This document shows, in pieces, positions 5,422-54,763 of a DNA stretch of 64,000 nt. Origin of the DNA: Prasinococcaceae sp. CCMP 1430 (lineage: Eukaryota > Plantae > Prasinodermophyta); assembly GCA_013416795.1 (NCBI GenBank), contig RQSC01000020.1, positions 414,735 through 478,734 on the forward strand, written 5' to 3'. Both the position numbers and the translations under genes were made by a program. The stretch's first letter is position 1, and each line of letters begins with the position of its first letter. Under the pieces are notes generated by a model, which made no database searches, was not told the origin of the DNA, and was given only the letters and a program-made list of their open reading frames with translations.

Positions 5422-5771
5422 CAACGCAACTTCGAACAGCCGCATGCTTACGTGGCGCGCGCGCGCGCGCGCGCTGCCTACACGCACGGCACACGCGCAC
5501 GCGCGCGCGCACACACACACACGTGGCGCTCCCCTCCACCGCCCCCCACGCCCCCGGCCCCTCACACCACACCACAAACCACTACCACCGCCACCACCAC
5601 CACCACCACACATACACACACACACACACACAAACGTGGCGCACACACACGCACGCGCGCACGTTTCCACGCACACGTGCGCGCACACACATACGCGTAC
5701 GCAGGAGCACACGCACGCACAGCGGCCGCTCTCTCCCTCGCGCCTCCAGCCTGCGCGCGTTCGCGCGCGCG

Positions 5772-7175
5772 ATGGCTCCCGGCGCGCGCGCACGCACGGC
5801 GCGCACGCCTTACTCGCCGCTCGCCGACCCGAGCGCGTGGTTCGTGGGCGCGTGCGCGCTGGCGCCGCCGGCGCTCGCTGCGCTCGCCGACGCCGAGGCC
5901 AAGGGGATGCTCCCGGACGCCGAGGCACTCGCGGCGGCGTACACGGCGTACGCGACGCACCCGCTCGTCGCAGGCGCGGCGGCCGTCACGGCAGTGGCGG
6001 CGTACGCGATGCGCGCGGCAGGGCGAGGGTGCGCATGCGCGCGCGCACACACGCACGCTACACGCTCACACGCGCATGTGCACGCGCTCACACACGCAGC
6101 GCACTCGCATGCTCACTCGAGCGCGAGCAAGTGCACGCGTGCTTGCGGCGAACTGATGCAACACACGCACTATATACACGCGCTCGCGCACACGCGCGCG
6201 CGCGCGACGAGCGCAGCCTGCCCCCCCTTCCCGCCTCGGACGCTCGCGCGGCGAGCTGGTACCTCCTCAACGCCACCGTCGTCAAGTCTCTCATGGACGG
6301 CCTGCACGACGGCGTGCCTGCGTTGCGCGCCGCGTACGCGCGCGCTGACGCGCGCTTCGCAACGGGTTGCGGCAGCGAGGGCGCTCCGGAGCTGGATGGC
6401 GGCGCGGCGGCGGCATGCGTGGTGACGACGTGCGAGCTGGTGCGTTGCGCAGTGTGTGCACACGTGCGCGCGCGCGCACGCACGCCCGCACGCACGCACG
6501 AGCGAATACGCACACGCACGCGCGTGCATGCACACACTCTTACACACATTCGCATGCGCGCGCCTTTTCGTGTGTAGGTGGTGATGGCCCCGCTGTGCGC
6601 GCTGCTCGCGTACGCGTACGCGGCGCGCTGGCGCTGCCGCGACGCCCTCGAGCTGGTGGTGTGCACACTGCAGGCCTTCGGGACAGTCGCCTTCGCCGGG
6701 CCGCAGCTGCTGCTGAAATTCAGGGTACGAGACCGCACACACACGCACACACCGACACCCACATACACAAATCGCTTATCCTTCGCGCGCTCGCGCACGC
6801 GACTGACGGGCGCGCACGCGCACCCGTCACTGTCACCACCACCGTCACCTCGCGCGCGTGTATTCGTGTATGTATGCGTATGCGTGTGCGTGCGTGTGTG
6901 TGTGTGTTGTGTGCATATGCTTTGTACCTCTGGGTGCGTGTGTCTGCACGTGTGCGCACGCGATGCAGGACGTGTGGCGCGGCTGGGAGCTCAGCGTGTC
7001 GAGCGTGGCGTACTTTTGGTTCGCCTTCGCGGCGTGCATGCCCGTGTGGCTGGTGGTGCCCGCGCTGCTCGGCGCGCGCGCGTGGCGCCGCCTCGACGCG
7101 GCGCTCGCGCGTGCGGCCGTCTACCGCGAGGTAGTCAGGGCGAGCCCCGACTTCGCGACTTATAAGACAAGGTAG
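5772..7175 (+). CDS. Emopamil-binding-protein / EXPERA family sterol isomerase-like membrane protein; 4 exons
   Basis: Hydrophobic helices with SWYLLNA..MDG..AYARADARF..ELVVMAPL..LELVVCTLQAFGTV..YFWF..PVWLVVP, the EBP-family pattern. GT-AG introns. Confidence 0.75.
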
Positions 7176-47922: not shown

Positions 47923-49483
47923 CTAGGAAATGACGCATTTGTCCTTGGCCTTGTCCTTCACCGAGCGCTTGCCGGTGTGCCCCTGCTGCCGCCGCTGGCG
48001 TCGCTGTGCCTGCGTTTGTTGGGCGTGCGCCTGCTGCGCCTGTCGAACATGAGATGACTGTCCCTGCTCACGCGCGCGCCGCTGCCGCCGTTGACGCTCT
48101 TCCTCCTCGTCGGCAAGCGCAAGTGCTAGCGCAAAGTCTGCATCGAGATCGCCAGCCGCCCCGGGAGTGTTGGCGACGCTCTCCTGCGCCCTTTGCGCCT
48201 CGCGTACTTGTTGTAGCATGCGCGCCTGTGCGCGCGCCTCACCCGACTGCGGCGCAGGGGCGCGCGGCGCCTCAGCCGCGCTTGCGAGGAGCGCCGCCGC
48301 CATCTGCGCCTGCTCGGATTCGGTCATCTGACTCTGGGCGGGTGCATGGTGCGAAAAGTCCGCCCCGACGTACTGAGTGTCCCCGCTCACGCCATCTAAC
48401 TTCTCCCACACGACGCTCGCCTCCCGCATGAAGCCCTGGTCGGTCGCCAGCAGGTAGACCTCCCCGCCTATCTTGAATATGGTGCCGAAGTGGTTGTTTC
48501 GAAACAGCACGGCCAGCTGGCGCTCGCGCACGGCAGCCTTGAGCTCGACAAGCCCGCGCGGCGTGAGCTGCGACTGCGTGCGGTCGAGGAAGTCCGAAAG
48601 GGTAGCGACCTCTTGCGCACGCGCAGCGGCGGCCTCATCCCCGGCCTCCTGTTCCCCCCCCCCTCCGTCATTGAGCGCGATCAGCCTCTCGACCAGCGTG
48701 TTATACGTGTGCCTCGTTACGTACCGCGCCTCGGCTGCGTCCGCTGAGTCGGCGACCCAGCCGTGACACAGCAAGATGTCGAGCAGATCGAAGATTGCAC
48801 ACTCCCCGGTGAACTCGAAGCGCGTGGTGCCACCGAAGGCCACATTCACGTCGAGGCCCGTTGCGAGCTTCGGCAGCACCGCAAGCGTGTCGGCGATGTT
48901 CTGCCGCAGATTGACCCCCGAGGCGTCGACGGTCACATCTGCCCCTGGCCCTCCACTTCTGCCACCGGGCGCGGTCGCCCGCTCGTTTGCGTCAAGCAAG
49001 TGCCCAGCCACCAGCGCGGTGAGGCCCTCCAGGGACACGTCTGTCTGGTCTTCGCGCAGCGAGATTGCGTTGCGCAGCAGCAGCACGTTGGCGATCGCGA
49101 GCAGCGGGCACGGGCCATTTTTGCTCTGCATCACCACGGCGCGGCGGGCCCCGAGGAAGTCGATGCGACGCACCGCGCATGTCGAGGGCTCGCCGCTCGC
49201 TGGTGCATCCGGCGGCCTCGGCGCGGAAACAGCGGGCGCGGGCGGGTCGGGCGCGAGAGCCTCGAGCGCAACGGCGGGAATCTCGTGCAGTGGCGCGGGC
49301 ACCTCGAATGATGCCTTGGTAGGCGCACCGATCGCAGGAGCGCGCATCTCCGCGGATGGCGGAGATGCGGGCGCGGGCGCCTCGAGGGTAGGTGCAGGAG
49401 TCTCGGGCACGGCCGCAGGAGCCTCGGGCGCGGCCGCAGGAGCCTCGGGCGCGGCCGCCTCGGGCGCCGCCGCAGGCTCGTCG
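47923..49483 (-). CDS. MINDY1: MINDY1/2 (FAM63) K48 deubiquitinase; native 5' end not visible
   Basis: Catalytic QSKNGPCPLLAIANVLLL, GLDVNV, IFDLLDILLCHGW, FRNNHF, LLATDQGF..VVWEKL; MIU-like DFALALALADEE; C-terminal CaaX CVIS. Confidence 0.9.
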
Positions 49484-49705
49484 ACCTCGAGGCGCTGTAC
49501 TCGGGTGACACGGCGGCGGCGATGAGGTGCCTGCGCCAGGAGCTCGCCCCCGCGGCCGCTGCCGCCAAGGCGGCCGCCAACGTCGATGAGCTGGCGCTGG
49601 CGATGCTGCTCAGGAAGGGCTGCTCGTCCGAGGTTGATGCGCCGCCCACGGGGTCTGCGCTGCCTACCATGGCACAGCTCGCGCTGTGCATGGCCACCAA
49701 AGGCG
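49484..49705 (+). pseudogene. Duplicated 222-bp fragment of the WDR26 CTLH exon (source 37344-37565)
   Basis: Gap-free alignment at offset 12140 with 9 mismatches counted by eye (about 96% identity). Confidence 0.9.
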
Positions 49706-50045
49706 ACAGGGCGCTCCGAGGGGGTGGTGGGCTGACTCCGGTGGTGTTTAGAAACACCGGTGTGACTCCCCCTCAACGTCCCAACCCCCCACCGCCCCCG
49801 CCGCGCGGGGCACGCGCTCTGCCCCCGCCGCAACACCCGCCTCGCCGCCGGCCCACCGCGGCGGTGTGCTGCAGTTCCCCGCACGTCCGCCACGTCAAAC
49901 TGAATGGCCGCGCATCGATATCGATGTCGTGTGTGGAATACACATATCTTATGTATATGTAAATTAACCACGGGAGATCAGACACGTGCGATTTGACGTT
50001 TAGCTGTTCCCCTGAGCGGCGACAGCGCTGCGTGGAGGGTGAGGT

Positions 50046-52538
50046 GTGTGTGGACCGCGGCGGCGGCGGCGGCCAAGGCGGGCGCGCGTGACAGGCCAGA
50101 CGAGCGTGGCGGCGCTCGCTCGCTCGCTCGCTCGCGCGCACGCCGCCGCGGGCGCGCGCGCCGCAGAAGCGCCGCACCTTGTCGTGCTTCTGCCCACGCC
50201 ACGCGAGGACGCCGCTGCGGCGCTCGCCGCGGAGATGCCAGGCCTCGCCGAATGCAACCGGACGGTCGTCCAGGCGCGCGCACGCACGCCTGCGCGCGCC
50301 CGCGAGTGCGCGAGCGCCCGTGCAGACGAGGGCGCGCTGCGTGACGCCAAGGCGCACAAATGTGGCGGTGCCGAGGGCGTCCTCGGCGTGCGCGTGGTCC
50401 TGCACGACTGCGCACCGCTGCCGAACCCGTTCGCGTCCGCCGAGGCCCGATACGCGGGCGTCTTCACCAAGCTGCGCGCCTGGTCGCTGCACGCCGCGCC
50501 GTTCAAGGCGCGGCGAGCGCTCTTCCTCGATGCGGACACGCTAGTGCTCGACGACGTTAGGGATCTCTTCGAAAGGGTGGATCCTCGCCTGCCGCGCCAC
50601 GTGGTCGCGGCCCCCGACGTCCTGGCCCCCGACCGCTTCAACGCAGGTGTGCTGGCCTTCGCCGTTGCCCCCGCCGCGGAGGCGTCGCTGCTTGCCGCGC
50701 TCGCCTCGGGGAGCCTCGGCAGCTACGACGCAGGTGACCAGGGGTGGCTCAACGAGTACTTCAGCGGCTGGTACGAGAGCGACGCGCGCTTCAGGCTACC
50801 GCTGGCGTACAACCTGCCCGCGGAGGTGGCAGCGCGCGAGCCCATGCTCTTCAGATCCCTGTGCGAGGGCGCCGCGGCCCATGGCACGGCCACCCCTCCC
50901 TGTCCCCGTGTCCCCCGCGCGCTCCTCGGCGCGGGCTGCGGGGCACGCGTGCTCCACTTCTGGGGCGGCGGCAACGCCAAGCCGTGGGCGGCCTCCTATG
51001 CGGCCTTCTTCGACGCCGCCGAGGGGGGCACAGCGGCGAGGCGGAGAAAGCTGCGCGCGCGGCTGGGCGCCGAGCGCTACGCGATGCTGGCGGCCTGGTG
51101 GCGGATCTACCTCGACGACGACCCTCGCCTCGAGCGTCTCCTTAGCGAGGACGATGACGTCGCATCTTTCGAGTGCCCGAGAGGCCACGATGGGGGCAAG
51201 CAGGCGATTGCGAGCCACGGCAGCGCCCGCGTCCCCGGGGAGGAGGTTGTGGGCGAGGTCCTTGGCGAGGCCCTCGAGAATGAAGGGGGCGCCGAGAGAC
51301 ACGAGGAGCTCGCTGGTGAGAAATTTGAGACCGTTCGGGACACCCAGGGCATCTTCGAGGGCGCCGACGTGCGAGGGGCCGAGGACGCGCCAGCAGAGGG
51401 CGCGCACGCGCGCGCACGGGTGTGCCCAGCTCAGGGCAAAGCGTATGACGCCGGGGCAGCCTTCTGGAGGCGCGTGGGCTCAACCGAATTTGCGACGCGC
51501 ATGCTCGCGGGCGTGAATTCTCTACCCGAGGAGGTCGATAGTGATACGGACAGCGACGACGAGGAGCACACGCCCGCGCTGCTGGCCGCGGCGCGGCGCG
51601 CCCGTGCAACCGCGCTGCGGGCGGGAGTGGTGCCTGTGTTGGTTGACCCGGGCGCCGAGGAGGTGCGGAGCCATCTGCGGAGCGGCTGCCCATGTGTAGT
51701 CAGGGGCTGGTTGCCGCGCTGGCGGTGCTACACGTCAGGCGCTTTCACGCTCGCTGCGCTCGCGGCAAGGCGGCCATCCCTCGAGGTGCGCATTGACACG
51801 AACGGGCGCTCCGAGGGCGGCGGCGCGCCCGAGTGGCGCGTCATGACGCTGGCGGAATTCGAGGACGCGGTGGCGCGCGCAGGCAGCGACGCCAAAGCCA
51901 GCTCGCGCGAGCTGCCGTACCTGCGGCTGTGGACATACGCCCAGGACTTTCCCGAGCTGGCGAAAATGGTCGTGGCCGACGCGGCCGACGGACCGTTCAA
52001 GGATCACACTGCAGCAGTCTTAGCTGGCACCAAGGGCGTGCAGCGGCGCCCCTCGAGCCTTCCCTGGTGGGTCTTCGCCGGGCCGCCGGGCACGCGCGCG
52101 CCGCTGCATGTCGACCCGTACGCGTCGCATGCCTGGTTTGCGCAGCTCTGCGGCGCCAAGCGCTTTGAGCTCTACCCGCCAGAGGATTGCAAGCTGTTGC
52201 ACGACGGCGCCGACTTCGTCGATGCGGACGCGCTCAGGCGCGCGCAGCGCGTGTCCGAGGGTGGTGGAAGCGCGCACGGCTCACACGTGCGGTGCGACAC
52301 GGGCGTGACGCTGCTCGAGAGATTCCCCAAGGCGCTCTGCGCGCGCAGGGTGACGGCGGCAGTCGGCGAGGGCGATCTGCTCGTGCTGCCAGCGAACTGG
52401 GCCCACGCCGTGTACGCCGACAGCGCGGGCGAGGGCAACGCGTGCGTGAGCCTCACGCACAACTTCGTTGACAAGGCTGGGGCGGCCGAGCTGCGCGCGC
52501 TGTACGCGCGCTTCCGGCTGAACAAGGCGGTCAAGTGA
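50046..52538 (+). CDS. GT8 (glycogenin-like) glycosyltransferase fused to a JmjC 2-oxoglutarate oxygenase; start unresolved
   Basis: Single 830-aa ORF. GT8: FTKLRAW, LFLDAD (50529-50537), FNAGV, GDQGWLNEYF, LPLAYN, VLHF..KPW. JmjC: PLHVD (52107-52115), GAKRF, WAHAV (52404-52406), SLTHNF. Confidence 0.85.
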   Translation: MCGPRRRRRPRRARVTGQTSVAALARSLARAHAAAGARAAEAPHLVVLLPTPREDAAAALAAEMPGLAECNRTVVQARARTPARARECASARADEGALRDAKAHKCGGAEGVLGVRVVLHDCAPLPNPFASAEARYAGVFTKLRAWSLHAAPFKARRALFLDADTLVLDDVRDLFERVDPRLPRHVVAAPDVLAPDRFNAGVLAFAVAPAAEASLLAALASGSLGSYDAGDQGWLNEYFSGWYESDARFRLPLAYNLPAEVAAREPMLFRSLCEGAAAHGTATPPCPRVPRALLGAGCGARVLHFWGGGNAKPWAASYAAFFDAAEGGTAARRRKLRARLGAERYAMLAAWWRIYLDDDPRLERLLSEDDDVASFECPRGHDGGKQAIASHGSARVPGEEVVGEVLGEALENEGGAERHEELAGEKFETVRDTQGIFEGADVRGAEDAPAEGAHARARVCPAQGKAYDAGAAFWRRVGSTEFATRMLAGVNSLPEEVDSDTDSDDEEHTPALLAAARRARATALRAGVVPVLVDPGAEEVRSHLRSGCPCVVRGWLPRWRCYTSGAFTLAALAARRPSLEVRIDTNGRSEGGGAPEWRVMTLAEFEDAVARAGSDAKASSRELPYLRLWTYAQDFPELAKMVVADAADGPFKDHTAAVLAGTKGVQRRPSSLPWWVFAGPPGTRAPLHVDPYASHAWFAQLCGAKRFELYPPEDCKLLHDGADFVDADALRRAQRVSEGGGSAHGSHVRCDTGVTLLERFPKALCARRVTAAVGEGDLLVLPANWAHAVYADSAGEGNACVSLTHNFVDKAGAAELRALYARFRLNKAVK

Positions 52539-52798
52539 GTCGTCGCAGCCATTTGAGCTGGATGACGACCGGCCGAGAGCTTGCAGAATGCCTGCGTGCC
52601 CGCGCGCCCGAGAGCTCACAAACGCCACACATGTTGTACGTACGATCTGTGTACATTGCAGTCATTAACAAAAATAACACGTATGTGTGCGTGTGCGTGT
52701 GCGGCGGCGGCGGTGGTGGTCGCGGTGGGGGGAGGTGGGTCCGCTGGTCGAGCGCACCGCTTGCACTCGCCCCACCTCCCTCCCGATGTTCACGCGCC

Positions 52799-53744
52799 TC
52801 AAGTCGCGACGAGCGTGCCCCAGTTCTGCTTGGTCTCGTCGCTCAGCTTGGCCCATGCCATGCGCACGTCCTGCAGAAAGGCCACGTGCACGTCGCCCGT
52901 CGACGAGGCGTCGTCGAGGCCTTGCGCGCGCATGCGCGCCCGGCGCTCGTCGCCCTTGCGGATGAAGGCGTTGGCGACGTCGAACGGATCGTCGCCGGTC
53001 GGGCCACCGCCGAGCATGATGCCGACATCGACTCGCTGACTCTGGGTCATGGCCCACTCCAACACCGCCAGATTGTTCTTGGACACCATGTGGATGCAGT
53101 CCACCGGGCAGACCTCCATGGCCTCCTGAATCTCGTCCTCCTCATTACCCCACTGCGTGTGCACGCGCGCCCGACCCCACATCTCCTCGTGCCCAAAGGT
53201 CCCGGGGCACACGTGAACGCATTGCATACACCCGATGCACGCCGACTCGTCGACGAAGGTCGCACGCTGGTCGCCAGGCCCGCGCGAAGGGTCGTCACGC
53301 GCCCACTTGGACAAAGGCTCGCCCGTGTACCCCACCTTGATGTGCGCTCGCAACGCCTCCACCTCGGAATCGTATATGCGACGCAGCGACGGATCCGAGA
53401 GCGCCGCGTACGCCTCGTTCATCAGGATGCACACCTCCATGGTCTCGGGCCCGGCGATGTCCGGGTGGCAGCGCTTCTGCAGCCTGCGGTACGCCTCCTT
53501 GATCTGGGCGTCGGACGCGGAGGGGTCGACGTCGAGCATCTCGTAGAAATCGCGAGGATACACGCCGTCGTCGGCGACGCTCCCGAGCGCCGACAGGGAG
53601 CCTCTGGCGCGCGCGTTCTCCTTGCCCACGAACTCGAGGCCCGTCTCAGCGGCGCCATCCGAGGCGGTCGCGCTCGCTCGCGCTGGCGCGCGCGCGTCCG
53701 CGCGGCCTCGCAGCGCCCGCCGCGGCGCTCGTGCCGCTTGCGGC
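52799..53744 (-). CDS. Plastid DnaJ + 4Fe-4S ferredoxin protein (CDJ3/4, DJC76-type), copy A; 5' end in gap
   Basis: J domain DFYEML..QIKEAYRRLQKRCHPD..MNEAYAALSD and Fd FVDESACIGCMQC..CPVDCIH. Confidence 0.9.
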
Positions 53745-54559
53745 NNNNNNNNNNNNNNNNNNNNNNNNNNNNNNNNNNNNNNNNNNNNNNNNNNNNNNNN
53801 NNNNNNNNNNNNNNNNNNNNNNNNNNNNNNNNNNNNNNNNNNNNNNNNNNNNNNNNNNNNNNNNNNNNNNNNNNNNNNNNNNNNNNNNNNNNNNNNNNNN
53901 NNNNNNNNNNNNNNNNNNNNNNNNNNNNNNNNNNNNNNNNNNNNNNNNNNNNNNNNNNNNNNNNNNNNNNNNNNNNNNNNNNNNNNNNNNNNNNNNNNNN
54001 NNNNNNNNNNNNNNNNNNNNNNNNNNNNNNNNNNNNNNNNNNNNNNNNNNNNNNNNNNNNNNNNNNNNNNNNNNNNNNNNNNNNNNNNNNNNNNNNNNNN
54101 NNNNNNNNNNNNNNNNNNNNNNNNNNNNNNNNNNNNNNNNNNNNNNNNNNNNNNNNNNNNNNNNNNNNNNNNNNNNNNNNNNNNNNNNNNNNNNNNNNNN
54201 NNNNNNNNNNNNNNNNNNNNNNNNNNNNNNNNNNNNNNNNNNNNNNNNNNNNNNNNNNNNNNNNNNNNNNNNNNNNNNNNNNNNNNNNNNNNNNNNNNNN
54301 NNNNNNNNNNNNNNNNNNNNNNNNNNNNNNNNNNNNNNNNNNNNNNNNNNNNNNNNNNNNNNNNNNNNNNNNNNNNNNNNNNNNNNNNNNNNNNNNNNNN
54401 NNNNNNNNNNNNNNNNNNNNNNNNNNNNNNNNNNNNNNNNNNNNNNNNNNNNNNNNNNNNNNNNNNNNNNNNNNNNNNNNNNNNNNNNNNNNNNNNNNNN
54501 NNNNNNNNNNNNNNNNNNNNNNNNNNNNNNNNNNNNNNNNNNNNNNNNNNNNNNNNNNN
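53745..54559. other. Assembly gap
   Basis: N run. Confidence 1.
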
Positions 54560-54763
54560 GAGCCCGGCGCGGGGACCGCGCGGCCGCGGGCCGCGGCGCT
54601 GTCGTCGCGGACTGCGCGGACACCCGCGCGGGCGCGCGCGCGTGTTTGTGTACACACACGCCGAAGTAATTACAGGGGGCTCCGTCCGCTGGTCGATGGC
54701 CGGCCCACTCGCACACACACCGTTGCGCTGCGCGCGATCGACCCTCCGGAGCGTTCGAGCGCC

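What the first reader, a model, noticed from the sequence alone, without database searches (positions are those of the whole stretch)
50046..52538. GT8 glycosyltransferase-JmjC hydroxylase fusion: a possible one-protein 'hydroxylate then glycosylate' system
Seen: one uninterrupted 830-aa ORF with no N, stop or intron between domains. It holds a glycogenin-type GT8 domain (DAD motif, FNAGV, GDQGWLN, HF..KPW), an acidic linker, and a JmjC domain with the full Fe(II) triad H-x-D...H plus the 2OG-binding Lys (GAKRF). Established: JMJD4/6/7-type JmjC enzymes hydroxylate protein lysines, and hydroxylation followed by glycosylation occurs in PLOD/LH3, the mimivirus collagen-modifying enzyme and the protist Skp1 pathway (which uses a GT8). 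Inference: this could be an undescribed bifunctional enzyme that creates and then glycosylates a hydroxy-residue. I do not recall this architecture being characterised.
Basis: partly seen in the sequence, partly recalled or inferred. Interest (0 to 1): 0.8.

Follow-up and report, generated by a model that had tools for sequence, protein, structure and literature searches.

The report
Sugar-transferase fused to JmjC hydroxylase
A GC-rich marine alga encodes one protein that joins a glycogenin-like sugar-adding enzyme to a JMJD6-like oxygen-dependent hydroxylase; the fusion is real, conserved and very rare, and it may point to an undescribed "hydroxylate, then glycosylate" protein modification inside the cell, though nothing about its activity has been tested.

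Summary
Window 50046-52538(+) is one open frame of 830 codons. It carries a glycogenin/Gat1-type GT8 domain and a Cupin_8/JmjC domain, and all catalytic motifs are intact.

- **Start of the gene.** The GTG start is not real. Window 50054-50103 disagrees with independent DNA of the same organism. Five environmental alleles instead give an 839-aa protein that starts at an ATG and includes the first GT8 strand.
- **The "acidic linker".** Its motifs belong to the N-terminus of the JmjC module and also occur in standalone homologues. The true tether is window residues 367-470.
- **The fusion is not an artefact.** One contig of the organism covers 50104-52800 without a mismatch. Six alleles keep the frame. 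A relative about 47% identical has the same architecture, with an inferred intron inside GT8.
- **Rarity.** Among 1.84 billion cluster representatives, only these two clusters have this architecture. No paper found describes it.
- **Placement.** The GT8 domain is neither a glycogenin nor a Gat1 orthologue. The JmjC domain is an orphan branch of the JMJD6/5/7/FIH hydroxylases.
- **A second fusion.** An independent protein in the reverse order (JMJD4-like JmjC, Gat1-like GT8, GT32) exists elsewhere.

Sequential hydroxylation then glycosylation of a cytosolic protein is the best reading but is untested. No transcript spanning the tether was found.

The parts
50046..52538 (+). Open reading frame of 830 codons plus stop. 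It is the body of the fusion gene. The true protein is probably 839 aa, with an ATG start that the window lacks.
50054..50103 (.). Segment that disagrees with independent DNA of the same organism, probably a local mis-assembly or collapse. It replaces about 240 bp that hold the real ATG and the first GT8 beta-strand.
   Evidence: Alignment to L001. Contigs of run X3 break at 50053 and 50104 and run on as sequence unlike the window.
50104..51143 (+). Glycogenin/Gat1-type GT8 (GT-A, retaining) domain, window residues about 20-366. It has a disordered insert (P0001 78-118) and a C-terminal helix shared with standalone relatives P0004 and P0015.
50529..50537 (+). DxD motif (D162-A-D164), the Mn2+/UDP-sugar site.
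   Evidence: Nearly invariant columns D171-A172-D173 in alignment A4; coordinates.
50955..50987 (+). HFWGGGNAKPW motif: the third metal-ligand His and the UDP-phosphate Lys of glycogenin-type GT8.
   Evidence: Aligned to glycogenin 'vvHFlG..KPW'.
51144..51455 (+). True inter-domain tether (window residues 367-470). It is acidic and Gly/Ala-rich and poorly conserved; the stretch between the same two landmarks is 55 aa in the relative. Codon-position GC pattern continues through it. It contains no Met and no stop.
51462..51506 (+). N-terminal motif of the JmjC module (FW.R.GS.EF...). It is shared with standalone algal homologues and predicted as two short helices.
51537..51566 (+). Acidic Ser/Asp run (DSDTDSDDEE). 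It is also present in standalone homologues and is disordered in the model.
51456..52535 (+). JmjC/Cupin_8 2-oxoglutarate oxygenase module (window residues 471-830).
   Evidence: Pfam; family profile against PDB, JMJD6 1.8e-38; AF2 model pLDDT 84 and Foldseek hits to JMJD5/7/TYW5/FIH/JMJD6.
52107..52115 (+). HxD (H688, D690), Fe(II) ligands.
   Evidence: Invariant in the 17-sequence family alignment; aligned to the JMJD6 HxD.
52158..52160 (+). K705, predicted 2-oxoglutarate C5-carboxylate ligand.
   Evidence: Nearly invariant in alignment A3; aligned to 'GHKRW' of JMJD6.
52404..52406 (+). H787, distal Fe(II) ligand (NWAHAV).
   Evidence: Nearly invariant (at least 90% of sequences) in alignment A3; aligned to 'WWHVV' of JMJD6.

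Best explanation
**What is shown.** This is one conserved nucleocytoplasmic protein of about 839 aa. It has no signal peptide or membrane segment at the N-terminus, which runs straight into the GT8 fold. An N-terminal retaining GT8 glycosyltransferase of the glycogenin/Gat1 superclade is tethered by a disordered stretch of about 100 residues to a C-terminal JmjC-only 2-oxoglutarate/Fe(II) oxygenase of the JMJD6/JMJD5/JMJD7/FIH type. Both active sites look intact.

**What is inferred.** The two domains most likely act on the same substrate protein. The JmjC domain would use O2 and 2-oxoglutarate to hydroxylate a side chain; Lys or Arg is the usual target in this subgroup. The GT8 domain would then transfer an alpha-linked hexose from a UDP-sugar onto that hydroxyl, or onto a glycan on the same target. 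Glycosylation of that target would then depend on oxygen and 2-oxoglutarate.

**Confidence.** That the fusion is real and both domains are catalytically competent: about 0.9. The sequential two-step mechanism: about 0.35.
For: **The fusion is real**
- A contig of the organism (run X3) covers 50104-52800 with no differences.
- Four further metagenome contigs encode the full-length protein with the same ATG N-terminus (three of 839 aa, one of 832 aa) and a fifth encodes a 529-aa fragment; with P0001 that is six alleles, all keeping the frame through the tether, one with an in-frame 7-aa deletion.
- The relative on L002 has the same order. A single BLAST HSP covers P0001 123-837 at 46.7% identity.
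- The codon-position GC pattern (GC3 0.70-0.82 against GC2 0.42-0.58) continues through the tether and is absent in the flanks.
- There is no stop after the GT8 domain, and no Met between M356 and M495 of P0001. A separate JmjC product carrying its conserved N-motif would therefore have no AUG.

**Catalytic competence**
- GT8: DxD, FNAGV, GDQG.LN and H..G..KPW are all present.
- JmjC: HxD is invariant, and the Lys and distal His are nearly invariant, in the family alignment; all three align to JMJD6.
- Both domain models are confident, and their structural neighbours are glycogenin/Gat1 and JMJD5/7/6/FIH/TYW5.

**Functional link**
- Both modules exist as standalone proteins in other algae. The fusion joins two otherwise independent enzymes and is kept under purifying selection in both domains.
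- P0012 is an independent fusion of a JMJD4-like JmjC with a Gat1-like GT8 and a GT32 domain, in the opposite order.
- Known precedents for hydroxylase and glycosyltransferase in one chain are LH3/PLOD3, mimivirus L230 and Pythium PhyA-Gnt1 (my own knowledge). The collagen LH3/GLT25D1 papers are listed.
Against: - There is no biochemical data at all.
- No transcript was seen across the tether. Only small metatranscriptome contigs lie at 50265-50576 and 52391-52539, and these could be contaminating DNA.
- Characterised GT8 enzymes other than glycogenin glycosylate sugars, not amino-acid hydroxyls.
- No JmjC-made hydroxy-residue is known to be glycosylated.
- The inter-domain frame being open is weak evidence on its own: a second frame of the tether is also stop-free in both species.
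- The standalone JmjC gene in Pseudoscourfieldia has no GT8 neighbour.
- The giant-virus relatives of the JmjC domain have no GT8 beside them.
Confidence: 0.4

Rival explanations
1. Skp1/SCF-centred enzyme. The GT8 domain docks on Skp1, or glycosylates the Skp1 glycan, as Gat1 does. It thereby brings a JMJD6-like oxygenase to SCF complexes, taking the place of the F-box found in the protist F-box-JmjD6 proteins (JcdI/JcdH/FBXO13). On this reading the two chemistries need not hit the same residue.
For: - The best solved match of the GT8 part is the Skp1 alpha-galactosyltransferase Gat1. The domain sits on the Gat1 side of the GT8 tree.
- GAT1 binds Skp1 stably at the interface that F-box proteins use (PMC13278062).
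- JmjD6-like oxygenases with an N-terminal F-box bind Skp1 in Dictyostelium and Toxoplasma and are conserved across protists (PMC9485057; PMC11570480).
- P0012 joins a JmjC to Gat1-like and Glt1-like (GT32) domains.
- The divergent neighbour of the gene is a MINDY deubiquitinase, which is anecdotal.
Against: - The GT8 domain lies outside the well-supported Gat1 clade and lacks its GDTGFLN signature.
- The JmjC domain is equally far from JMJD6, JMJD5 and JMJD7 by structure. It is not shown to belong to the JcdI/JcdH groups.
- Whether this genome has the rest of the Skp1 pathway (PhyA, Gnt1, PgtA, Glt1) could not be checked here.
Confidence: 0.15
2. Two activities that are merely co-expressed or co-regulated, or that act on a non-protein substrate. 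Examples would be hydroxylation and glycosylation of a tRNA base, a lipid or a metabolite. There would be no hydroxyl-to-glycan hand-over on a protein.
For: - TYW5, a tRNA hydroxylase, is among the structural neighbours.
- GT8 enzymes have very diverse acceptors.
- JmjC domains of this group are found fused to many unrelated domains: methyltransferase, thioredoxin and sulfhydryl oxidase, and F-box.
Against: - The fusion is kept in two species about 47% identical and in all sampled alleles.
- A second independent JmjC+GT8 fusion exists. This argues for more than chance co-expression.
Confidence: 0.2
3. Self-priming, glycogenin-like protein. The GT8 domain glycosylates the protein itself, possibly on a residue hydroxylated by its own JmjC domain, to seed a glycan.
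For: - Glycogenin is the closest structural match.
- A long disordered tether could serve as an intramolecular acceptor.
Against: - The glycogenin acceptor tyrosine loop (..SYGY/TYTY in glycogenin-type rows) is replaced by AEVAARE with no Tyr.
- The domain lies outside the glycogenin clade.
- There is no glycogen-synthase-binding tail.
Confidence: 0.07
4. Annotation or assembly artefact: two adjacent genes read through because stop codons are scarce in 72% GC DNA.
For: - A second frame of the tether is also free of stops.
- No RNA spans the tether.
- The window does contain an assembly flaw at the 5' end of the gene.
Against: - The same in-frame arrangement occurs in two species and six alleles.
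- The GT8 part has no stop, and no AUG lies upstream of the conserved JmjC N-motif.
- Coding periodicity runs through the tether.
- A contig of the organism spans the junction without differences.
Confidence: 0.05

Closest known systems
Glycogenin-1/2 (GT8, self-glucosylating primer of glycogen)
   Same: - GT-A fold, TM 0.80 by target.
- DxD, FN.GV, GDQG.LN and H..G..KPW motifs.
- Cytosolic, with no signal peptide.
   Different: - Outside the glycogenin clade in the tree.
- No acceptor Tyr in the loop after YN.
- No glycogen-synthase-binding tail.
- Carries a JmjC domain instead.
Gat1, the UDP-Gal:glucoside-Skp1 alpha-galactosyltransferase of Toxoplasma and Pythium (GT8; PDB 6mw5)
   Same: - Best sequence match among solved structures, 1.4e-18.
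- TM 0.79.
- Same side of the GT8 tree.
- Cytosolic, single catalytic domain.
   Different: - Not inside the Gat1 clade, which has 99% SH-aLRT support.
- Signature is GDQGWLN, not GDTGFLN.
- Fused to a JmjC domain; Gat1 is described as a single-domain protein (10.1101/764241).
JMJD6 / JMJD4 / JMJD5 / JMJD7 / FIH / TYW5 (JmjC-only hydroxylases, Pfam Cupin_8)
   Same: - Cupin_8 hit.
- Family profile matches JMJD6 at 1.8e-38, JMJD5 at 2e-31, FIH at 1.5e-24 and JMJD7 at 2e-23.
- DSBH fold and the HxD...H plus Lys site.
   Different: - Only 15-21% identity to any of them.
- No clear orthology.
- Own N-terminal motif (FW.R.GS.EF plus an acidic run), shared only with algal and protist standalone homologues.
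F-box-JmjD6-like proteins of protists (JcdI/JcdH, FBXO13)
   Same: A JMJD6-related oxygenase carrying an N-terminal module that, in those proteins, binds Skp1 (PMC9485057, PMC11570480).
   Different: - No F-box detected; the N-terminal module here is a GT8 enzyme.
- Membership of the JcdI/JcdH clades was not tested.
Bifunctional hydroxylase-glycosyltransferases: LH3/PLOD3, mimivirus L230, Pythium PhyA-Gnt1 fusion
   Same: A 2-oxoglutarate oxygenase and a glycosyltransferase in one chain, and the logic of hydroxylating then glycosylating.
   Different: - Different families on both sides: those use lysyl- or prolyl-hydroxylase-type oxygenases and GT_PLOD/GT25/GT60 domains, against JmjC and GT8 here.
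- LH3 acts in the secretory pathway; this protein looks cytosolic.
- These comparisons rest on my own knowledge, except for the collagen papers listed.
P0012 (uncharacterised, Logan contig L010): JMJD4-like JmjC + Gat1-like GT8 + GT32
   Same: JmjC and a cytosolic GT8 in one ORF.
   Different: - Reverse domain order.
- The JmjC is from another subfamily, 23% identical.
- The GT8 is inside the Gat1 clade.
- It has an extra GT32 domain.
- It is a singleton cluster seen on two contigs.

Membership tests
CAZy GT8, glycogenin/Gat1 type | GT-A fold superposable on glycogenin or Gat1 | tested here: met
   AF2 model pLDDT 82.5. Foldseek: 3t7n TM 0.80, 6mw5 TM 0.79, E about 1e-15.
CAZy GT8, glycogenin/Gat1 type | DxD plus distal His metal site and the KPW lysine | tested here: met
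   LDADTL and HFWGGGNAKPW are present. The DxD is nearly invariant across the 28-sequence alignment; the HF..KPW motif is shared with most full-length rows.
CAZy GT8, glycogenin/Gat1 type | Pfam PF01501 at or above the gathering score | tested here: not met
   23.1 bits (window ORF) and 23.8 bits (P0001) against a cutoff of 24.3. Sequence matches to solved GT8 structures at 1e-18 outweigh this.
Glycogenin proper | Acceptor tyrosine (Tyr195 loop) and membership of the glycogenin clade | tested here: not met
   No Tyr in the aligned loop. The domain lies outside the 58-row glycogenin clade, which has 99% support.
Gat1 (terminal Skp1 glycosyltransferase) | Membership of the Gat1 clade, with the GDTGFLN-type signature | tested here: not met
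   The query groups with P0004 (SH-aLRT 91), outside the 22-row Gat1-like clade. The labels rest on motif and on the alignment with PuGat1, not on named orthologues.
Gat1 (terminal Skp1 glycosyltransferase) | Co-occurrence with PgtA-like and Glt1-like genes, and binding to Skp1 | not testable with these tools
The criterion is taken from 10.1101/764241 and PMC13278062.
JmjC / Cupin_8 2-oxoglutarate oxygenases | Pfam Cupin_8 above the gathering score, and a DSBH fold | tested here: met
   68 bits against 27.4. Model pLDDT 84.4. Foldseek to JMJD5, JMJD7, TYW5, FIH and JMJD6, E 1e-15 to 1e-11.
JmjC / Cupin_8 2-oxoglutarate oxygenases | HxD/E...H iron triad and the 2-oxoglutarate-binding Lys | tested here: met
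   H688 and D690 are invariant, and K705 and H787 nearly invariant (at least 90%), in the family alignment, and all align to the JMJD6 site.
JMJD6 (or JMJD4/5/7) orthologue | Clear closest relationship to one characterised hydroxylase | tested here: inconclusive
   The profile prefers JMJD6 (1.8e-38) over JMJD5 (2e-31). Structure search ranks JMJD5 and JMJD7 first. Identity is 15-21% throughout.
F-box-JmjD6 proteins (JcdI/FBXO13) | N-terminal F-box | tested here: not met
   No F-box family hit in Pfam at E up to 0.1 or E up to 0.001. Divergent F-boxes could escape Pfam.
Bifunctional hydroxylase-glycosyltransferases (LH3, L230, PhyA-Gnt1) | The glycosyltransferase acts on the residue made by the hydroxylase domain | not testable with these tools
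   This needs enzyme assays and mass spectrometry.

The most novel reading that the evidence does not exclude
JmjC hydroxylases and cytosolic GT8 glycosyltransferases form a previously unrecognised, oxygen- and 2-oxoglutarate-gated O-glycosylation pathway for nucleocytoplasmic proteins: a hydroxy-Lys or hydroxy-Arg, or similar, carrying an alpha-hexose. This pathway would be distinct from collagen hydroxylysine glycosylation and from Skp1 hydroxyproline glycosylation. It would have been fixed as a single polypeptide at least twice independently: in this alga and its relative, and in the JMJD4-GT8-GT32 protein P0012.
Probability: 0.3. Interest if true: 0.85.

Novelty: new variant of a known kind. 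Interest (0 to 1): 0.6.

Why it matters
JmjC-only hydroxylases (JMJD4/5/6/7, FIH) put hydroxyl groups on translation, splicing and signalling proteins. What these hydroxyls are for is largely unknown, and none is known to be glycosylated.

A conserved fusion of such an enzyme to a glycogenin-like transferase is a natural "Rosetta stone". It makes one hypothesis directly testable with a single recombinant protein: that cytosolic hydroxylation can prime glycosylation, as happens for collagen and Skp1. It also offers a handle on oxygen and 2-oxoglutarate sensing in marine phytoplankton.

If the Skp1-centred reading is right instead, the protein would show a glycosyltransferase domain standing in for an F-box.

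Tried and rejected
1. **Word-indexed protein search with the GT8 part alone.** It returned only P0002; alanine-rich words swamp the index. As a result, no named Gat1 or glycogenin orthologues were obtained, and the tree labels rest on signature motifs.
2. **Whole-protein Atlas search.** Scores were about 0.72, so it was uninformative. The top "procollagen-lysine dioxygenase GT" cluster is not significant and was not used.
3. **RNA evidence.** Only two metatranscriptomes hold 6-7% of the words, and no contig bridges 51100-51700. The high-share runs look like DNA, with flat depth over the intergenic flanks.
4. **Gene neighbourhood of standalone homologues.** No JmjC/GT8 adjacency was found.
5. 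**Giant-virus origin.** Standalone JmjC relatives at 27-29% identity occur in two giant-virus MAG contigs. There is no GT8 beside them and no fusion.
6. **Open frame through the tether as proof of fusion.** I gave this little weight, because another frame is also stop-free in this GC-rich DNA.
7. **Organism identity.** It is coded in the tools and was not resolved. It is a GC-rich (about 70%) alga, probably photosynthetic, found in TARA ocean metagenomes. I therefore did not use arguments from its storage polysaccharide.
8. **Mapping the Skp1-contact residues of GAT1 onto this domain.** Not done, because no full Gat1 sequence was available by reference.
Full report

The ORF list gives 50046..52538(+), 830 aa, with no N and no stop. 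ORFs in other frames that lie within this span are at most 289 aa.

Pfam finds Cupin_8 (residues 538-807, E 1.6e-18, 68 bits against a cutoff of 27.4). It finds a sub-threshold Glyco_transf_8 hit (23.1 bits against 24.3). The weak Pfam score understates the GT8 domain:
- phmmer against PDB sequences gives 1.4e-18 to the Skp1 alpha-galactosyltransferase Gat1 (6mw5) and about 3e-18 to glycogenin-1.
- An AF2 model of residues 1-380 of the full-length allele (pLDDT 82.5, pTM 0.84) superposes on glycogenin-1 and Gat1 with target-normalised TM 0.80 and 0.79.

For the JmjC part, a 17-sequence family alignment used as a profile hits JMJD6 (1.8e-38), JMJD5 (2e-31), FIH (1.5e-24), JMJD7 (2e-23) and TYW5 (1e-20). 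An AF2 model (pLDDT 84.4, pTM 0.86) finds the same set by Foldseek, both in PDB and in Swiss-Prot models. The iron ligands H688 and D690 are invariant in that family alignment; the 2-oxoglutarate lysine K705 and the distal ligand H787 are nearly invariant (at least 90%). All align to the JMJD6 site.

**2. The 5' end in the window is wrong.**

The frame opens directly after a TGA at 50040, starts at a GTG, and has no ATG before residue 63. P0001 is a 99%-identical 839-aa protein on a TARA metagenome scaffold (L001). It begins at an ATG and has 29 N-terminal residues that include the canonical first strand of GT8, "YVTL".

The DNA alignment shows that the two sequences agree up to about window 50048 and again from 50104. 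Between those points, about 50 bp in the window stand in place of about 240 bp in L001. Contigs from a run of the organism itself (X3, flat depth of about 28 over genes and spacers, so probably DNA) break at the same two points. One contig matches 49766-50053. Another matches 50104-52800 with no differences and then runs on for about 230 letters that do not match the window. Four further environmental contigs encode the same ATG N-terminus, three as 839-aa and one as 832-aa proteins, with natural polymorphisms.

I conclude that 50054-50103 is a local assembly flaw in a very GC-rich stretch, and that the real product is the 839-aa protein.

**3. Is it one protein?**

Several lines agree:
- The X3 contig spans both domains and the tether without any difference. 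That rules out a mis-join in the window.
- Six alleles keep the complete frame. One has an in-frame 7-residue deletion in a GT8 loop.
- P0002 is a second cluster (12 members on 13 marine contigs) with the C-terminal half of GT8, a tether and the JmjC module in one ORF. On L002 the N-terminal half of GT8, including its DxD, lies in an upstream ORF. A 269-nt GT..AG intron (5757-6025; GC 0.63 against 0.72 in the exons) joins the two ORFs in frame. The junction, FER|GAFAAAPDV, fits the family pattern. The resulting 722-aa model aligns to P0001 in a single HSP over residues 123-837 at 46.7% identity. The intron is an inference, since no RNA was seen. ORF calls that read through it give obvious non-coding translation.
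- The codon-position GC pattern persists across the tether (GC3 0.70-0.82, GC2 0.42-0.58) and is absent in the flanks.
- The GT8 part has no stop of its own, and there is no Met between M356 and M495 of P0001. The conserved N-terminal motif of the JmjC module, at 482-491, therefore has no AUG upstream of it.

The bare fact that the tether is open is weak evidence, because a second frame is also stop-free in both species.

RNA evidence is thin. Two metatranscriptomes contain short contigs at 50265-50576 and 52391-52539 that are identical or nearly identical to the window (0-3 differences each). None bridges the tether, and DNA carry-over cannot be excluded.

**4. Anatomy.**

Standalone homologues of the JmjC module begin with the same FW.R.GS.EF motif followed by an acidic Ser/Asp run. 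They come from Pseudoscourfieldia/Pycnococcus, Cymbomonas, Pyrodinium, Picozoa and unnamed marine contigs. In the model the motif forms two short helices with pLDDT of about 80, and the acidic run is disordered. The JmjC module therefore spans window residues about 471-830.

The real tether is residues 367-470. It is Glu/Gly/Ala-rich and poorly conserved, and the corresponding stretch is only 55 residues in the relative.

The GT8 domain carries a disordered insert (P0001 78-118). It also has a C-terminal helix (R..KLR..G....L..WW..Y) that it shares with its nearest standalone relatives P0004, P0011 and P0015.

The N-terminus runs straight into the GT8 fold with no signal peptide or hydrophobic anchor. 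The protein is therefore presumably nucleocytoplasmic, like glycogenin, Gat1 and the JmjC hydroxylases. This last point is inference.

**5. How rare is it?**

A full HMMER scan of 1.84 billion cluster representatives (from about 15 billion proteins) was run with the 839-aa protein. Only P0001 and P0002 carried both domains in this order. The next hits, from E 1e-37 upward, are single-domain JmjC or GT8 proteins. Prokaryote-style gene calling on metagenomes may split intron-containing eukaryotic fusions, so this count is a lower bound.

Full-text searches found no paper on a JmjC-GT8 protein. This scan's own notes contain nothing on JmjC in this genome.

Two giant-virus MAG contigs carry standalone JmjC relatives at 27-29% identity, without a GT8 next to them.

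**6. Where do the domains belong?**

A maximum-likelihood tree of 93 GT8 domains (quick search, SH-aLRT support only) resolves three groups:
- a glycogenin clade with signature GDQGLLN, 58 rows, support 99;
- a Gat1-like clade with signature GDTGFLN, 22 rows, support 99;
- a loose third set with signature GDQGF/WLN.

The query pairs with the standalone protein P0004 (support 91) in the third set. It sits on the Gat1 side of the tree, within a 35-row set supported at 99. Rows left out were near-identical members of the P0001 and P0002 clusters, and P0002 itself because its domain is partial.

The domain is therefore neither a glycogenin nor a Gat1 orthologue. The glycogenin acceptor-tyrosine loop has no Tyr here. 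The clade labels rest on signature motifs and on the PuGat1 alignment, not on named sequences. The one search that could have supplied names failed.

The JmjC module is an orphan branch of the JmjC-only hydroxylases. It is 15-21% identical to every characterised member. JMJD6 is best by profile, and JMJD5 and JMJD7 are best by structure.

**7. Independent fusion.**

P0012 is a 1040-aa ORF in about 50% GC DNA, seen on two Logan contigs. It has a JMJD4-like JmjC domain, then a GT8 domain inside the Gat1-like clade, then a GT32 (Gly_transf_sug) domain.

Its JmjC domain is only 23% identical to the one here, and the domain order is reversed, so it is an independent event. GT8-GT32 fusions without JmjC form a protist family, for example in Amorphochlora. 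In Toxoplasma the last two Skp1 sugars are added by Glt1, a GT32 enzyme (the GT32 assignment is my own knowledge), and by Gat1, a GT8 enzyme (10.1101/764241).

Two independent JmjC+GT8 fusions are the strongest computational hint that the two chemistries are functionally coupled.

**8. Mechanism.**

What is shown: both active sites are intact, both domains are conserved between species, and they are covalently tethered.

What I infer as most likely (about 0.35): the JmjC domain hydroxylates a side chain of a nucleocytoplasmic protein, and the GT8 domain adds an alpha-linked hexose to that hydroxyl or to a glycan on the same target. This would be analogous to LH3/PLOD3, mimivirus L230 and the Pythium PhyA-Gnt1 fusion (my own knowledge). 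The main weakness is that, apart from glycogenin's tyrosine, GT8 enzymes are known to glycosylate sugars.

A literature-based alternative (about 0.15) centres on Skp1:
- JmjD6-like oxygenases of protists carry an N-terminal F-box and bind Skp1 (PMC9485057, PMC11570480).
- GAT1 binds Skp1 stably at the same hydrophobic interface that F-box proteins use (PMC13278062).

A GT8-JmjC protein could thus be a "Gat1-for-F-box" swap that delivers an oxygenase to Skp1. Against this, the GT8 domain is outside the Gat1 clade, and the rest of the Skp1 pathway could not be checked in this genome. An unverified first-stage note reports an EGLN/PHD-type prolyl hydroxylase elsewhere in this genome (s1-377826).

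The remaining rivals are non-protein or unrelated substrates (about 0.2), self-priming (about 0.07) and artefact (about 0.05). They are set out in the Rival explanations section.

**9. Verdict.**

This is a real, conserved and very rare two-enzyme fusion. Its parts belong to known families, but its combination is undescribed, so I class it as a new variant of a known kind (hydroxylase-glycosyltransferase bifunctional proteins). Its function is untested.

Interest is 0.6. A specialist in 2-oxoglutarate oxygenases or cytosolic glycosylation would find it notable and easy to test. However, it is confined, as far as seen, to two related marine algae, and the key claim is still inference.

Noticed in passing
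window 50054-50103: About 50 bp in the window stand where a 99%-identical metagenome scaffold has about 240 bp, and the organism's own contigs break at both edges. This is a probable assembly collapse in a G-rich stretch that removes the gene's ATG and first 29 codons.
   Followed up: yes
window 47923-49971 (-): The divergent upstream neighbour is a MINDY-family deubiquitinase (Pfam MINDY_DUB, E 8e-79). Its start lies roughly 100-300 bp from the fusion gene, so the two may share a bidirectional promoter. The arrangement is not conserved on the relative's contig L002.
   Followed up: partly
window 52799-54718 (-): The convergent downstream gene encodes a DnaJ domain followed by a 4Fe-4S ferredoxin domain (Fer4_13). 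The ORF is interrupted by a run of N.
   Followed up: partly
L010 753-3875 (P0012): A 1040-aa ORF joins a JMJD4-like JmjC, a Gat1-like GT8 and a GT32 domain. It is an independent JmjC-glycosyltransferase fusion in the reverse order, in an unidentified organism with about 50% GC.
   Followed up: partly
P0182-P0187 (e.g. Amorphochlora amoebiformis): GT8 (Gat1-like) plus GT32 (Glt1-like) fusions form a protist family. They may be the last two Skp1 glycosyltransferases in one chain.
   Followed up: no
P0021, P0058, P0096, P0041: Large multi-glycosyltransferase proteins: GT64+GT8, and GT64+DUF6492+GT8.
   Followed up: no
L002 5757-6025: Inferred 269-nt GT..AG intron inside the GT8 domain of the relative's fusion gene. 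It has lower GC than the exons. Some metagenome gene calls read through it.
   Followed up: yes
L014 1864-4483 and L015 129-2856: In two giant-virus MAG contigs, a standalone JmjC relative sits next to a divergently oriented DnaJ-domain gene. A DnaJ gene is also the downstream neighbour in the window. This is probably coincidence.
   Followed up: no
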